A stretch of DNA of 5,251 nucleotides from Trichoplax adhaerens (lineage: Eukaryota; Animalia; Placozoa), in assembly GCF_000150275.1 (NCBI RefSeq), contig NW_002061118.1, positions 4,912-10,162 on the forward strand. The letters run 5' to 3'. Every line of letters starts with the position of its first letter. The first letter of the stretch is position 1. Position numbers and translations under genes: made by a program. The notes beneath the pieces are model-generated. The model did not search any database. It worked only from the letters and a program-made list of their open reading frames with translations, and was not told where the DNA came from. Below are positions 616 through 5,251 of the stretch, piece after piece.

Positions 616-928
616 CTTAAATTCATGCATACTATTATTTTTATTTGATGCCTAAATCAATAAAACAGACGACTAACTCGTTGGCTGTTTCGTACTTTAT
701 TGTACTACTTGCAAAGTACTCCTTGTTAATCAGTGCGTGTATTTAGCATATATATATGCAGTTGGATAGAGCTGTTTAGCCGAGTAGAGTTTTATATCAC
801 TTGTCCATCTCTTTTTATCCACTTGCTCCTGTTTGCAATAAGCAGCGCGCAGTCGGATTGATAGGATTAAATCGACGTCACAGTAAAATCATCAAGTTGT
901 TATTAGCCGATTATTAAAACATCCATTG

Positions 929-1554
929 GTAAGTGACCTATTCCGTTTGGGTATCCATCCTTATACGTTGTATTTCAAGTAAAAATAGAAATTAAAGATA
1001 GGTAAACGACGCCAACGAAACTATATTGCAAGCATTCTTTCTTATTTTGCACTATCATTGATGTGGTTAGCATTCATTTGCTGTTGTCTATTAGAATAAA
1101 ACGATTGTTGTTTGATGGTTATTATGATTATGAGTATAATGTATTTGTAAGCTGGAGTGCATTTTGTTAATGTACACGTCAATTAGTCTACTCTTTGGAT
1201 TTAGTTTGGCATTAGTTGATGTCAGCACACGATTGTCCGATAGCATTGTCTTCAGTAATCACCTACAGAGATTGATTGACTGATTTTCGGATAATCTTCC
1301 ATGCGGAATTGATAGCGACATTGTAGAAGTTGATTTATTGATGCTTGAAAATTGTGTATAATGGAATAATTAATGTTGTTCTGTTGAACTACGACTGGCA
1401 CGCAAGTACAACCATTCCGACATACCCTCATTAATTCATAGAGATAATATCGATCCGATGATTAGTAATTAATGGTTGCAACGAAGCTAGATTTGAATCT
1501 TATTTATCTCTAACCTGTCGTTCTAGTCTTTAACTAACATACTATTGAATTTAG
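929..1554 (+). other. Possible 5'-UTR intron (acceptor at 1526 or 1554)
   Basis: Donor TTG|GTAAGT at 928/929. Two candidate 3' sites, each with a CTAAC branch-like motif: CTAAC (1510-1514)...TTCTAG (1526) and ACTAAC (1533-1538)...TTTAG (1554), both just upstream of ATG 1566. Confidence 0.35.
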
Positions 1555-1565
1555 AGAAGAAAAAG

Positions 1566-3069
1566 ATGGCTGATGATGAATCTGTCTGTTCCACGAGTGT
1601 GCTTCCTCACCATACCGGTATACAATCACTGTACGAAAAGGGCAACTCATGCAAGACCGCCTTCCAGTTGGTGGACGGACTTTCTTGTTATACGCAAGCT
1701 GTCGATGAGATTGCTTCGTTGTCGAATCCTAGTGCAGATATTGATCGACTTGCATGCGATATTTATCTTGGTCTTTGCGACATTTACACTTTACAATATC
1801 AATTCATGAAAGCTGCTGAATGGAGTCAAAAAGGACAAACTGTGGCTACTAACCTGCGAGATGAAGTGAGCATGGCTCAATGTTTACAAAGAGAAAGCGA
1901 GATTAAGAGGTGCCAAGGGGATTACAACGGAGCACTGGAAGACGGTAAGAAATCGTTGGAAATGAAATTAAAATGGTTAGACGAAAAGGATGCTCGTCTT
2001 GCAGATAGTTATTATCAAATTGGGCGCGTCTACTTCGACTTGTGCAAGCTTGACTTATGTCGGACTATATCGGACAAGTCGCTGCAAATTCGATTGTCAG
2101 TCCTTGGTCACAATCATCCCGATGTTGCCAACTCCTATCACAACATAGGAGATGTCTATAGAAGCCTAGGCAAGTACGATCAGGCTCTGGGTATGTATAA
2201 CAAGTCACTGCAAATTAGATTGTCAATCCTTGGTCACAATCATCCTGATGTTGCCAACTCATATAACAACATAGGAGTTGTCTATGATCACCAAGGCAAG
2301 TCAGATCAGGCTCTGGATATATATGACAAGTCACTGCAAATTGGATTGGCAGTCTTAGGTCACAATCATCCCTATGTTGCGAAGTCATATAACAACATAG
2401 GAGTTGTCTATCATCGCCAAGGCAAGTACGATCAGGCTCTGGATATGTATCACAAGTCACTGCAAATTGGATTGTCAGTCCTTGGTCACAATCATCCCTA
2501 TGTTGCCAACTCATATAAAAACATAGGAGTTGTTTATAGAAACCAAGGCAAGAACGAGCAGGCTCTTAATATGTATGACAAGACGCTGCAAATTCGATTG
2601 TTAGTCCTTGGTCACAATCATCCCTATGTTGCGAAGACATATGATAAAATAGGAGTTGTCTATAGAAGCCAAGGCAAGTACGATCAGGCTGTGGATTTGC
2701 ATGACAAGTCATTGCAAATTCGATTGTCAGTCCTTGGTCACAATCATCCCGATGTCGCCAACTCATATAAAAATATAGCAGTTGTTTATCATTGCCAAGG
2801 CAAGTACGATCAGGCTGTGGATATGTATAAGAAGTCACTGTATATCGCAGCCTTAAACGGGAATGATCGCCTAGTTACAAGGATAAGAAAGAATATCGAA
2901 ATCACTCTCCAAAAGCAGAAATCAGTGATCCGTGATCTGTCGACATCAATAGCGAGAAATTTCATCAGAAGTATCGTTGAACTGTTTCAACCTAATCAAA
3001 CCAGCAATGTTACAGCGCCAGCAAATACTATCGACGGCAGTCAGAACAATCAACACATACAACAGAAAG
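1566..3069 (+). CDS. Coding exon A: tetratricopeptide-repeat region (42-aa kinesin-light-chain/nephrocystin-3-like TPRs) plus linker
   Basis: Repeats of the form LGHNHPxVAxSYxNIGxVYxxQGKYDQALxMYxKSLQI match the TPR pattern (Y4, I7, G8, Y11, G15, A20, Y24). About three degenerate TPRs lie at ~1749-2072. The ORF track's TTG start at 1545 is unlikely in a eukaryote. Confidence 0.9.
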
Positions 3070-5251
3070 GTAAGTGGAGTTTTAATACAGTAGTAGACGA
3101 GAGAGCGATGGATAACCGTAACCATATTCTGCATTTTGTTGTTCTACAGCTTTACAAGAAAAGAAATATTACAATGCATATAGCAAAGGCTTAAAACATG
3201 GTCATTGCTTTAATCATTTAATACGAGGCATGTTTATTGGCCCTCGCAATGTGGGCAAAACTTCTCTTCGAAAAATATTTACTCAGCAACGACTCAACAA
3301 TCCATCTCCGACACAAGTGGCTGAGAGTTTGGATATTATGGTAGACACTGAATATTATAATATTCATAACTCAGAGTGTTGTGATTGGACTGAAATACTG
3401 GACGATAAAGTCAAGACAGTCATACAACAGTTAGCTCAGCCAAGTATCGATCGTCAAGATAACATCAGTCAGCAAGTAACCGACATAGATCCAATAGATC
3501 AACCCGTTATAGCCAATAATCCACCTGTGTCAAATTGGCAACAACACAGTGTCGATTCTTCTGCAACTGATGTCATTACGCAAGATGTAGCGCTAGTAGG
3601 GAAAGAGATTCCAATAGAATCACAGTCTAAACGAGGCTTGCATCAATATTACTGTTCGTCCATGGAAAGTCAAAATGCAGACAAAGATGATAAAAATCAG
3701 TATGTTAAAATATGGGATTTCGCAGGTCATGCCGTCTATCATGTTTCTCATTATCCGTTTATCTCCGTTAATTGTATTTATATTTTAGTATTTAATATTA
3801 ATCAAGACATTAACGACAAGGTAAGAACAAGGAAGAACCAATCACTCAAAACGACGTATTTACAAGCTATGCAAGAATGGCTTACATCAATCATAGCTGG
3901 CCATACAAGCCAAAGTACCATCAATGTTAACATTAAAAGTGGAGATGAACAGCATTTACCACCTTCACAGCATTCATTACCTATTATTATTTTAGTAGCT
4001 TCTCATGGCGATTGTATTACCAATGAAGAAGATGGACGAACTCGATTCAATCAATTTGTGTCTACATTGACGTCTCGCATGCCTTCTTATGCCAGTCATA
4101 TCTATTCTTCTGGTATTATTTTTGATTGCAATCCTCTTGATAGTACTCCATCGACACAGAAGCTGCGTCAACAATGTTGTCTTCGTTTACATGGTATCAT
4201 TAAGGCATTTGTACAATCACTGCCATTTATTACGAATCCTATACCTATTCGATGGTATATCATGGCTACAATATTAAATAAATCGCTCCCTACTAACAAT
4301 CAACCCGCATCTTCTATTATGAATCAAATTAGACATTCTCAAGTGCATAATATTATGACAATGCAACAAATAGTAACCTTGTCTCAACAATACGGATTAT
4401 ATGAAAACCGTGATGAATTAATCGCTATGCTAATGTATCTACACGATTTAGGAGAAGTCATCTATTGTGATAAAGTAGGCGACGACGGAATTATTATAAC
4501 TAATGTCGATTGGTTGTTAAGTATATTTCGTTCCATTATTCAATTACAAGATTTTGTACAAGGAAGTGCACAAATAAAACGTGACTATGATATAGCAAGC
4601 CAAACAGGAAAATTATCAAGATCATACATTGATCATGCTATTTATAAATTTAATTTAGATGACAATAGTAAGCAAACTATATTGGCACTCATGCATGCTT
4701 ATGATATTCTATGTTCAATTACAAATGAGAAGAACGACAACGGCGAAGAATGTCAATACTTTGTTCCATACTTGTTACGATATGATGTTAAGCCATTCGA
4801 TTTATCAAAATATCATCAATCAGATTGGCTCTACATCGGATACGAGCATACAGATATTCCATATCTTCCAGATGGAATTTATTATTGCTTGTTATCTTCC
4901 TGTTTAAAGGAATGGAATAATACGGACGTAGAATTATACTATCAATGTGCCAAATATTATTTAGCAAATGACAATCACTATCTTGTAGTCAGGAAAGAGG
5001 AATCTCATATCGGTTTACAATATTGCTATCAGAAAATAAATGAGCTCAAGAGGAGTCAATCGATTATCGATAAAGTTAAAAATTCTATATTTGTCAAACG
5101 GCCTCACGAAATTGTCAAGAATAAACTCATCTCCACTGTCAATGATAGGATGGTTAAGTTTAAAGGGGCCGATTGTCGATATTTCGTCAAATGTAGTGAA
5201 TGTAATACACAAACAAGTATAACGAAGAATCAAGGAAGGAGATCAAAATGA
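1566..5251 (+). CDS. Spliced TPR-Roc-COR (ROCO family) GTPase, join(1566..3069,3150..5251), predicted 1201 aa
   Basis: ATG at 1566 in good Kozak context (AAGATGG). Removing the phase-1 intron 3070-3149 fuses the frames: ...HIQQK-A-LQEKKYYNAYSKGLKHGHCFNHLIRGMFIGPRNVGKTS, with no stop between 3150 and 3230. 1504+2102=3606 nt = 1202 codons, ending at TGA 5249-5251. TPRs are N-terminal and Roc G-motifs plus COR motifs are C-terminal. Confidence 0.85.
2073..2840 (+). repeat. Coding tandem repeat: six 126-bp units plus a 12-bp partial
   Basis: Units start at 2073, 2199, 2325, 2451, 2577 and 2703. GGTCACAATCATCC recurs at 2106, 2232, 2358, 2484, 2610 and 2736 (exact period 126, no indels). Hand counts give 18/126 differences for unit 1 vs 2 and 17/126 for unit 3 vs 4 (~86% identity). 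Confidence 0.97.
3070..3149 (+). other. Spliceosomal GT-AG intron, 80 nt, phase 1
   Basis: Consensus donor AAG|GTAAGT at 3069/3070. Pyrimidine-rich acceptor TTTTGTTGTTCTACAG|C at 3149/3150. Splicing restores a single reading frame between the two ORFs. Confidence 0.85.
3150..5251 (+). CDS. Coding exon B: Roc (Ras of complex proteins) GTPase domain followed by COR domain
   Basis: P-loop GPRNVGKTS (3239-3265); switch-I Thr candidate at 3311; WDFAGH (3713-3730) followed by YHVSHYPF and YILVFN; G4 IILVASHGD (SHGD 4001-4012). COR-like motifs: PIPIRW, LMYLHDLGEVIY, IITNVDWL, LMHAYDIL, YFVPYLL, LPDGIYYCLL. Confidence 0.9.

What the first reader, a model, noticed from the sequence alone, without database searches (positions are those of the whole stretch)
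2127..2801. Repeat variation peaks at the TPR ligand-binding positions, including a two-residue 'code'
Seen: in helix A (A1-x2-S3-Y4-x5-N6-I7-G8-x9-V10-Y11-x12-x13-Q14-G15), positions 12-13 read RS, DH, HR, RN, RS, HC (codons at 2160, 2286, 2412, 2538, 2664, 2790: AGAAGC, GATCAC, CATCGC, AGAAAC, AGAAGC, CATTGC). Position 5 reads H, N, N, K, D, K; position 2 is N/K; position 9 is D/V. These are multi-nucleotide non-synonymous changes beside codons identical in all six units even at third positions (GGC AAG, CAG GCT, CAA ATT, GGT CAC AAT CAT). Known: TPR positions 2, 5, 6, 9, 12 and 13 line the concave peptide-binding groove. Inference: diversifying selection on specificity residues within a fixed scaffold, loosely like TALE RVDs or PPR codes, and possibly a programmable binding scaffold.
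Basis: partly seen in the sequence, partly recalled or inferred. Interest (0 to 1): 0.8.

Follow-up and report, generated by a model that had tools for sequence, protein, structure and literature searches.

The report
Fast-evolving binding groove in placozoan TPR
A Trichoplax gene joins near-identical TPR repeats to a Roc-COR GTPase switch, and the repeat positions that differ are those lining the peptide-binding groove and change faster than silent sites; this pattern is known from fungal and algal receptor-like proteins and is not a TALE-like code.

Summary
In the window alone, the six groove positions named in advance (2, 5, 6, 9, 12, 13) carry 56 of 161 pairwise residue differences, against 23 expected (p = 0.0005).

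The window is from Trichoplax adhaerens. It encodes one spliced gene: a kinesin-light-chain-type 42-residue TPR array, an 80-nt intron, then Roc-COR. Close relatives end in a Death domain. At least seven further copies lie in the genome, with 2 to 10 full internal units.

Across 42 units of this subfamily, non-synonymous diversity at the groove positions is 2.56 times synonymous diversity (bootstrap interval 2.17-3.07). Elsewhere in the unit it is 0.56. Site models agree (M1a/M2a LRT 49, M7/M8 LRT 54), and neutral simulations with heavy recombination reach only 8.4. The same positions contact the peptide in the solved KLC1-JIP1 complex. Diversifying selection on the groove is therefore supported.

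The 'two-residue code' is not supported. Variation also affects positions 2, 5, 9, 17, 21-25, 31 and 33. Positions 12-13 show 16 different pairs in 42 units and 96 in 331.

The pattern is known from fungal NLR TPRs and Ectocarpus NB-ARC-TPRs, and Trichoplax TPR-ROCO genes were catalogued in 2014. This scan has already reported the same pattern at other loci of this genome.

The parts
729..1544 (+). Upstream non-coding segment shared with the paralogous copies (start of the duplicated segment; probable promoter/5'UTR)
   Evidence: 92-94% nucleotide identity to C1375, C1404, C1381 and C1295 copies
1566..3069 (+). Exon 1: ATG at 1566, N-terminal helical region, TPR array, linker; ends on the first base of a split codon
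   Evidence: ORF; Pfam TPR_12 E 1.8e-118, 7 stretches; N-terminus MADDESVCSTS matches Trichoplax sp. H2 protein P0001
2001..2126 (+). Degenerate first (N-cap type) TPR unit, about 65% identical to the internal units
   Evidence: the same cap type opens every paralogous array
2127..2756 (+). Five full 126-bp (42-residue) KLC-type TPR units, 81-91% identical in DNA
   Evidence: AlphaFold2 helix A = positions 41-13, helix B = 17-35, pLDDT 80-96
2757..2843 (+). C-terminal capping part-unit (repeat-like to about position 29)
   Evidence: the same cap (…KSLYIA.LSGND.LV..) closes the paralogous arrays
2160..2795 (+). The six position-12/13 codon pairs (2160-2165, 2286-2291, 2412-2417, 2538-2543, 2664-2669, 2790-2795). 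In each unit the other groove codons lie at unit offsets +3 (position 2), +12 (5), +15 (6) and +24 (9)
   Evidence: per-site piN/piS in the subfamily: position 2 3.58, position 12 3.52, position 9 2.82, position 13 2.67, position 5 1.71, position 6 1.16
3070..3149 (+). 80-nt phase-1 intron (GTAAGT … CTACAG)
   Evidence: the junction …QQK|A|LQEKKYY… is exactly as in the annotated Trichoplax sp. H2 protein P0001; 95-97% identical in paralogs
3150..5251 (+). Exon 2: Roc-COR, cut by the end of the contig
   Evidence: Pfam Roc E 2.2e-12, COR-A E 1.2e-10
3239..3262 (+). P-loop GPRNVGKT of the Roc GTPase
   Evidence: read directly from the translation
3656..3823 (+). Roc core matched by Pfam (includes WDFAGH, switch II)
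   Evidence: residues 143-198 of the ORF
4316..4777 (+). COR-A domain
   Evidence: residues 363-516 of the ORF
5225..5251 (+). Two 1-nt gaps relative to paralogs and a terminal TGA at the contig end: a frameshift or poor end sequence

Best explanation
The window holds most of one Trichoplax adhaerens gene of the TPR-Roc-COR(-Death) family. Its N-terminal solenoid of kinesin-light-chain-type 42-residue TPRs is the ligand-binding part. The residues on the exposed face of each helix A (positions 2, 5, 9, 12, 13, with the conserved Asn6 and position 17 of helix B) line the concave groove, where an extended peptide would lie. Among the eight gene copies, arrays change by gain, loss and shuffling of whole 126-bp units. 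At the groove positions, amino-acid-changing differences are kept more often than silent ones, so each copy, and each unit, presents a different binding surface on a constant scaffold. Shown here: the gene structure, the family, the excess of non-synonymous change at these positions, and their equivalence to the contact positions of a solved homologue. Inferred: that a ligand binds there, that binding is passed to the Roc-COR GTPase switch and the Death domain, and that the pressure comes from varied or changing ligands such as microbial or non-self molecules.
For: Fold and family: Pfam TPR_12/TPR_10, Roc and COR-A. KLC1/KLC2 are the best solved relatives by sequence (E 1e-38 to 2e-58) and by fold (TM 0.77-0.83 on the target). 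The AlphaFold2 repeat region has pLDDT 80-96. Gene and family: the splice junction is confirmed by the H2 protein P0001. Death domains occur in close relatives and in downstream exons of paralogs. At least seven further copies carry 2-10 full internal units; their flanks are 92-98% identical, but their arrays only 84-87%. Selection: NG86 dN/dS is 2.5 at positions 2, 5, 9, 12 and 13 against 0.53 elsewhere in the window, and 2.6 against 0.58 in 42 subfamily units. For the set named in advance, piN/piS is 2.56 (unit bootstrap 2.17-3.07; gene bootstrap 2.09-3.38), or 2.12 when only the synonymous sites of codons 1-16 are used. In 21 independent nearest-neighbour pairs, groove pN is 0.365 against pS 0.115 (Fisher p = 3.5e-18). 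M1a/M2a LRT is 49.3 (omega 3.05 for 25% of sites) and M7/M8 LRT is 54.2. Null simulations give LRT 0-4.8 without recombination and 2.6-8.4 with extreme recombination. Two other subfamilies (111 and 70 units) have the same top sites 2, 9 and 12, with piN/piS 1.6-2.2. In a genome sample of about 330 units, entropy peaks at positions 12, 9, 2 and 13. Location: the variable sites lie on one face of helix A (helical moment 0.62, p = 0.003). KLC1 residues that contact the JIP1 peptide (R266, N301, V305, K309, Y313, K340, N343, N344, L347, L348, N351, N386; PMC6214655) fall on unit positions 12, 5, 9, 13, 17, 2, 5, 6, 9, 10, 13 and 6 when counted on the KLC1 alignment.
Against: No ligand, expression or binding data exist. 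The units compared are paralogous repeats, not orthologues, so a tree of units is only an approximation. 20% of informative site pairs fail the four-gamete test. My site models use a fixed topology and scaled branch lengths, not a full codeml/HyPhy run. Tree-based tests also flag helix-B positions 17, 21, 24, 25, 31 and 33, which are not on the classical groove list; 31 and 33 are nearly two-state and may reflect shuffling. Position 9 is not significant in the site-wise test (omega 1.6). The T. adhaerens and Trichoplax sp. H2 orthologues of the C1375 copy differ by 3 of 1632 bases, with no residue change in the array, so there is no sign of change on that very short time scale. This copy may be damaged at its 3' end.
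Confidence: 0.7

Rival explanations
1. The groove differences are old and merely preserved. Gene conversion among units and among copies keeps resetting the scaffold, including its silent sites. Silent divergence then under-states the age of the units, and the ratio above 1 reflects maintenance of distinct units rather than rapid adaptive change.
For: The history is mosaic: against C1375, Roc-COR dS is 0.028 and N-terminal dS 0.094. Four-gamete failures rise from 11% for sites within 10 nt to about 22% beyond. Groove divergence is almost as high in the closest pairs (pN 0.31 at pS 0.06) as in all pairs (0.41), so it is decoupled from the scaffold.
Against: Groove codons are interleaved with scaffold codons within 36 nt, so conversion tracts would homogenise them too unless selection removes such products, and that is itself selection for diversity. 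38 of 42 units have a unique 2-5-9-12-13 combination and few are shared between copies, which does not fit old unit identities being preserved across copies. Synonymous diversity inside the units (0.16-0.19) is not lower than flank dS (0.03-0.13). The PHI-like test is not significant (p = 0.30).
Confidence: 0.2
2. The variable positions are simply unconstrained surface residues drifting neutrally. This is the general TPR pattern described by Magliery and Regan, with no positive selection.
For: Positions 2, 5, 9, 12, 13 (and 33, 34) are the most variable in TPRs in general (PMC1261162). The whole family evolves loosely (omega 0.3-1.0 in flanks, 0.56 in the rest of the unit), and some copies are decayed.
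Against: Neutral drift cannot exceed a ratio of 1. The ratio is 2.1-3.2 with intervals that exclude 1 by bootstrap over units and over genes, in independent pairs, and in two likelihood tests. Neutral simulations do not reproduce it.
Confidence: 0.07
3. Positions 12-13 form a modular per-repeat recognition code, like TALE RVDs or the PPR code, in which each repeat reads one unit of a linear ligand.
For: Positions 12-13 are among the most variable and are statistically coupled (mutual information 0.98 bits, p = 0.001). The units are otherwise near-identical.
Against: Variation is spread over at least 5 groove positions plus helix B. There are 16 distinct pairs in 42 units and 96 in 331, with no small recurrent alphabet. 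In KLC1-JIP1 one ligand residue is held by residues of two neighbouring repeats. The coupling may simply reflect shared descent.
Confidence: 0.03

Closest known systems
Kinesin light chain TPR domain (KLC1/KLC2; PDB 3NF1, 3ZFW, 6FUZ, 7AI4)
   Same: The same 42-residue TPR_12/TPR_10 unit, the same helix boundaries and Asn5/Asn6 ladder, and the best sequence and fold matches. Peptide-contact positions coincide with the variable positions here.
   Different: KLC has six non-identical, conserved repeats in a single-copy motor adaptor. Here the units are 81-91% identical in DNA, vary in number between copies, and are fused to Roc-COR.
Highly internally conserved TPR, ANK and WD repeats of fungal NLRs (Dyrka et al. 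2014, PMC4986451; Podospora 42-residue TPRs, PDB 4Y6C/4Y6W)
   Same: KLC-like TPR motifs, variation in repeat number, shuffling, and positive selection at a few positions that map to the concave side.
   Different: The fungal proteins carry a NACHT or NB-ARC domain with C-terminal repeats. Here the switch is Roc-COR and the repeats are N-terminal. Internal amino-acid identity here is about 74%, below the 85% used to define the fungal class. The host is an animal.
Ectocarpus NB-ARC-TPR and LRR-ROCO candidate receptors (Zambounis et al. 2012, PMC3341825; PMC11378527)
   Same: 126-nt, 42-residue TPR units under diversifying selection, and ROCO GTPases with hypervariable repeat sensors in multi-copy, birth-and-death families.
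   Different: In Ectocarpus each repeat is its own exon and shuffling is exon shuffling; TPRs go with NB-ARC and LRRs with ROCO. Here the whole array is one exon and the TPRs go with ROCO.
Trichoplax ROCO expansion (Civiero et al. 2014, PMC4104024) and DAPK1-type ROCO proteins
   Same: At least 17 T. adhaerens ROCO genes with TPR, LRR, CARD and Death domains were already listed. Repeat-Roc-COR-Death is also the layout of DAPK1 (own knowledge).
   Different: That paper does not analyse repeat variation or selection. DAPK1 has a kinase and ankyrin repeats instead of TPRs.
TALE repeat-variable di-residues and the PPR code
   Same: Near-identical helical repeats with two adjacent variable residues that happen to carry the same numbers (12, 13).
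   Different: There is no small alphabet, the variation is not confined to the pair, the expected ligand is a peptide, and recognition in the nearest solved homologue is not one-repeat-one-unit.

Membership tests
KLC-type TPR (Pfam TPR_12 / TPR_10) | Profile match above the curated cut-off | tested here: met
   TPR_12 387 bits (cut-off 30.1); TPR_10 245 bits (cut-off 27.5)
KLC-type TPR (Pfam TPR_12 / TPR_10) | 42-residue helix-turn-helix units forming a solenoid like KLC | tested here: met
   Period 126 bp with no indels; alternating 16- and 19-residue helices, pLDDT 80-96; Foldseek top hits are KLC1/KLC2, TM 0.77-0.83 on the target
ROCO proteins | Roc GTPase immediately followed by COR | tested here: met
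   Roc 47.7 bits (cut-off 27) and COR-A 41.9 bits (cut-off 35.3) in the same exon; P-loop GPRNVGKT and WDFAGH visible in the translation
ROCO proteins | GTP binding and hydrolysis | not testable with these tools
   Needs biochemistry
TPR-Roc-COR-Death family of Placozoa | C-terminal Death domain | tested here: inconclusive
   The contig ends inside or just after COR. Death is present in the 93%-identical H2 protein P0008 (40.3 bits) and in downstream exons of the C1381 and C1404 copies
Hypervariable, internally conserved repeat sensors of NLR-type receptors (fungal NLR class of Dyrka 2014) | Positive selection at a few repeat positions on the binding surface | tested here: met
Hypervariable, internally conserved repeat sensors of NLR-type receptors (fungal NLR class of Dyrka 2014) | Repeat-number variation between alleles or copies | tested here: met
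   2 to 10 full internal units among eight copies; allelic variation not testable
Hypervariable, internally conserved repeat sensors of NLR-type receptors (fungal NLR class of Dyrka 2014) | Over 85% internal amino-acid identity of repeats | tested here: not met
   161 differences in 630 pairwise comparisons, about 74% identity in the window
Hypervariable, internally conserved repeat sensors of NLR-type receptors (fungal NLR class of Dyrka 2014) | Central NACHT or NB-ARC (STAND) domain | tested here: not met
   Only Roc and COR-A are found. It works like this class but is not a member
TALE-like repeat code | Variation essentially confined to residues 12-13 | tested here: not met
   Positions 2, 5, 9, 17, 21-25, 31, 33 and 41 also vary
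TALE-like repeat code | Small recurrent alphabet of di-residues | tested here: not met
   16 pairs in 42 units; 96 pairs in 331 units
TALE-like repeat code | One repeat reads one unit of a linear ligand | not testable with these tools
   In KLC1-JIP1 the Tyr pocket is built by residues of TPR3 and TPR4 together, which argues against it

The most novel reading that the evidence does not exclude
The TPR-Roc-COR-Death copies of placozoans are an animal repertoire of intracellular non-self or microbe sensors. They would be analogous to NLRs but built on a ROCO switch, with specificities diversified at the TPR groove by unit shuffling plus positive selection. The papers I could search do not describe such a receptor class in animals: Kamm et al. 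2019 on placozoan immunity does not mention ROCO proteins.
Probability: 0.3. Interest if true: 0.65.

Novelty: new member of a known kind. Interest (0 to 1): 0.4.

Why it matters
If these proteins are sensors, one of the simplest animals diversifies an intracellular receptor family in the same way as fungi and brown algae, but with a Roc-COR GTPase where those use an NLR ATPase. That bears on how death-domain signalling and repeat-based recognition were first combined in animals. It also bears on what ROCO proteins (LRRK2, DAPK1, MFHAS1) sense through their repeats. In practice, the natural variants give a ready set of groove sequences on one scaffold for binding studies. On its own, the finding extends a known pattern to a new gene family and phylum, and this scan has already seen it at other loci of the same genome.

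Tried and rejected
1. Comparing T. adhaerens with Trichoplax sp. H2 orthologues (C1375 copy against L067) was uninformative. They differ by only 3 of 1632 bases, with no residue change in the array.

2. I tested whether the window is an allele of the very similar C1375 gene. Contig bases 1-2988 are not syntenic with that locus, so I treat it as a paralog. An assembly gap lies between those bases and the window, so this is not certain.

3. A PHI-like permutation test for recombination was not significant (p = 0.30), although 20% of site pairs fail the four-gamete test. Recombination is therefore neither shown nor excluded.

4. Coordinates of the AlphaFold2 model are not available to scripts, so no solvent-exposure map was made. 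I mapped the groove by helical periodicity and by the contact residues of the solved KLC1-JIP1 complex.

5. codeml, FUBAR and GARD are not installed. I wrote M0, M1a, M2a, M7, M8 and a site-wise test on a fixed IQ-TREE codon tree, and checked them with null simulations.

6. The joined (spliced) protein was neither built nor searched. The exons were searched separately by reference.

7. Long antisense ORFs inside the array (2215-2514 and 2566-2838 on the minus strand) were dismissed as stop-free artefacts of the repeat.

Full report
**What is in the window**

The window is the last 5251 bases of a 10.2-kb contig (C1239) of a 105.6-Mb genome in 1414 contigs. Its proteins are nearly identical to annotated proteins of Trichoplax adhaerens and Trichoplax sp. 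H2, so the source is the placozoan T. adhaerens. An assembly gap lies directly upstream of the window.

Two long ORFs on the + strand are one gene:
- Exon 1 starts at ATG 1566 and ends at 3069.
- An 80-nt intron runs from GTAAGT to CTACAG at 3070-3149.
- Exon 2 starts at 3150.
- The predicted junction, …QQK/A/LQEKKYY…, is exactly that of the annotated H2 protein P0001.

Exon 1 matches Pfam TPR_12 (E 1.8e-118) and TPR_10. Exon 2 matches Roc and COR-A. Close relatives continue into a Death domain: P0008 and P0012, and downstream exons of two paralogs. This contig ends first. I searched the exons separately by reference; the joined protein was neither built nor searched.

**Checking the observation**

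- TRF reports one array at 2073-2840: period 126, 6.1 copies, 85% matches, no indels.
- Phased from helix A, there is a degenerate first unit (2001), five full units (2127-2756) and a C-terminal cap (2757 onward).
The four codon runs said to be identical in all six copies are identical, third bases included.
Six random positions would hold 23 (p = 0.0005).
- The peaks are at positions 13, 5 and 12.

**A larger sample**

The genome holds thousands of TPR_12 candidates (2164 in the first look). From 67 fetched stretches I extracted 331 distinct in-frame 42-residue units. In that sample, amino-acid entropy peaks at positions 12 (3.7 bits), 9, 2 and 13. Positions 4, 8, 11, 20, 27, 28, 30 and 39 are almost fixed (before a minor re-deduplication).

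Units at least 82% identical in DNA to the window's units form a sharply separate subfamily of 42 units from eight gene copies: the window, C1295 (two copies), C1375, C1404, C1381 (two copies) and C449. All copies share the same N-terminal region, the same first and last cap units and, where present, the same Roc-COR. They carry 2 to 10 full internal units.

Between copies:
- Upstream DNA, intron and flanking coding parts are 92-98% identical, with dS 0.03-0.13 and omega 0.3-1.0.
- The arrays are only 84-87% identical and cannot be aligned unit for unit.
- One copy has an in-frame stop in its array, and one has no Roc-COR.

**Is it selection?**

| Test | Groove positions | Rest of unit |
|---|---|---|
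| Nei-Gojobori dN/dS, window (positions 2, 5, 9, 12, 13) | 2.5 | 0.53 |
| Nei-Gojobori dN/dS, 42 units (same positions) | 2.6 | 0.58 |
| piN/piS, set named in advance (2, 5, 6, 9, 12, 13) | 2.56 (unit bootstrap 2.17-3.07; gene bootstrap 2.09-3.38) | 0.56 |
| Same, using only synonymous sites of codons 1-16 | 2.12 | – |
| 21 independent nearest-neighbour pairs, paired on non-groove codons | pN 0.365 vs pS 0.115 (Fisher p = 3.5e-18) | pN 0.052 |

- Dropping any one gene leaves the groove ratio at 2.4-3.0.
- Per site, the highest piN/piS values are at position 2 (3.6), 12 (3.5), 9 (2.8) and 13 (2.7), followed by 33 (2.2), 25, 5, 31, 24 and 21 (1.6-1.8).
- On an IQ-TREE codon tree, my implementation of the site models gives M1a against M2a LRT 49.3 (p = 2e-11; omega 3.05 for 25% of sites). 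M7 against M8 gives LRT 54.2.
- A site-wise likelihood test is significant after Bonferroni correction at positions 2, 12 and 33. It is nominally significant at 5, 13, 17, 21, 24, 25 and 31.
- Because repeat units recombine, I checked the test by simulation. Neutral data on the same tree gave LRT 0-4.8. Neutral data in which three segments had independently permuted genealogies gave 2.6-8.4. The observed 49 is far outside both.
- Two other subfamilies in the genome (111 and 70 units, silent diversity about 0.3) show the same top sites 2, 9 and 12, with ratios of 1.6-2.2.

So the ratio exceeds 1 at the groove positions by methods that do and do not use a tree.

**Where the variable residues lie**

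- AlphaFold2 folds the repeat region with pLDDT 80-96. Helix A spans unit positions 41-13 and helix B spans 17-35.
- The closest solved folds are the KLC1 and KLC2 TPR domains, which are also the best sequence matches.
- Within helix A the variable sites lie on one face (helical moment 0.62 against 0.26 for shuffled values, p = 0.003). Helix B shows no such periodicity.
- In the KLC1-JIP1 crystal structure the peptide lies on the concave surface. It is held mainly by the first helices of the repeats, through R266, N301, V305, K309, Y313, K340, N343, N344, L347, L348, N351 and N386 (PMC6214655).
- Counting along the KLC1 sequence as aligned to the window, these residues are unit positions 12, 5, 9, 13, 17, 2, 5, 6, 9, 10, 13 and 6.
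- For TPRs in general, Magliery and Regan found positions 2, 5, 9, 12, 13, 33 and 34 to be the most variable and on the concave face. Positions 2, 5, 6, 9, 12 and 13 contact the ligand in HOP (PMC1261162).

The helix-B sites (21, 24, 25, 31, 33) remain unplaced. Positions 31 (R/G) and 33 (S/A) are nearly two-state and may owe their tree-based signal to shuffling.

**The 'code'**

- In the 42 units, positions 12-13 show 16 different pairs (HD 7, RH 5, DH, HR and KS 4 each, and so on).
- 38 of 42 units have a unique combination at positions 2, 5, 9, 12 and 13.
- In 331 units there are 96 pairs, and 17-19 residue types at each variable position.
- Positions 12 and 13 are statistically coupled (0.98 bits, p = 0.001), which may reflect shared descent.
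- This is unlike a TALE or PPR code, which uses a few recurrent combinations at two positions only.
- In KLC1-JIP1 a single ligand residue sits in a pocket built by two neighbouring repeats.

The code idea is not supported.

**How it most likely works**

- Shown: a TPR solenoid whose groove residues evolve faster than silent sites, in a multi-copy gene family whose arrays gain, lose and reshuffle units, fused to Roc-COR and, in relatives, a Death domain.
- Inferred: the groove binds extended peptides or other ligands that differ between copies. Binding is coupled to the Roc-COR GTPase or dimerisation switch, and the Death domain recruits death-fold partners. This would work like an NLR without being one.
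- Main rival: scaffold homogenisation by gene conversion makes silent divergence too young, while old groove differences are preserved. The mosaic flanks and the decoupling of groove and scaffold divergence fit this. However, groove and scaffold codons are interleaved within 36 nt, few groove combinations are shared between copies, and silent diversity in the units is not low. Even in that case, selection for diversity is needed.
- Neutral drift alone cannot give ratios above 2.

**Comparison with what is known**

- The pattern is established for fungal NLRs. There, KLC-like TPR motifs show repeat-number polymorphism and positive selection on the concave side (PMC4986451).
- It is also established for Ectocarpus NB-ARC-TPR genes with 126-nt TPR units, alongside LRR-ROCO genes under the same regime (PMC3341825; PMC11378527).
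- The expansion of ROCO genes with TPR, LRR, CARD and Death domains in T. adhaerens was listed by Civiero et al. 2014 (PMC4104024).
- The review of placozoan immunity does not mention ROCO proteins (PMC6321704).
- I found no paper describing selection on the TPRs of these placozoan genes.
- This scan has already reported the same pattern at other loci of this genome (s1-739359, s1-751087, s1-741782, s1-778783, s1-739330). Those are unchecked AI notes and I do not count them as evidence.

**Verdict**

Noticed in passing
window 5225-5251: Relative to the C1375 and C1381 copies, the last 27 bases have two 1-nt gaps that shift the frame into a TGA at the very end of the contig. This is either a real 3' frameshift in this copy or poor sequence at a contig end. 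The paralogs read on to a further intron and a Death-domain exon.
   Followed up: partly
contig C1239 (L060) 2989-4911, just upstream of window base 1: A run of N (assembly gap) ends exactly where the window begins. The 2988 bases before the gap are not syntenic with the locus of the most similar copy (C1375).
   Followed up: partly
window 3230-5248 and 1566-2000, against L062 (C1375): The history between two copies is mosaic. Roc-COR is 98.1% identical (dS 0.028), the N-terminal region 94.5% (dS 0.094), and the arrays are completely re-patterned (5 against 6 full internal units, no shared groove combination). This suggests gene conversion between copies outside the array.
   Followed up: partly
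L061 (C1295 copy 1) and L066 (C1381 copy 2): The family has decayed members. One array is interrupted by an in-frame stop and is followed by a Roc region only 75% identical. Another has two full internal units (four units with the caps) and no detectable Roc-COR.
   Followed up: partly
window 3263-3655: About 130 residues lie between the Roc P-loop (GPRNVGKT) and the part of Roc that Pfam recognises (from residue 143, including WDFAGH). This unusually long, polar insert in the GTPase is conserved in the H2 protein.
   Followed up: no
unit positions 31 and 33 (e.g. window 2217-2219 and 2223-2225 in the first full unit): Two nearly two-state helix-B sites (R/G and S/A) give the strongest tree-based signal after positions 2 and 12. 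They recur in all combinations across copies, as expected if short segments are shuffled between units.
   Followed up: partly
window 2215-2514 and 2566-2838, minus strand: Long antisense ORFs inside the array are by-products of a stop-free repeat, not genes.
   Followed up: no
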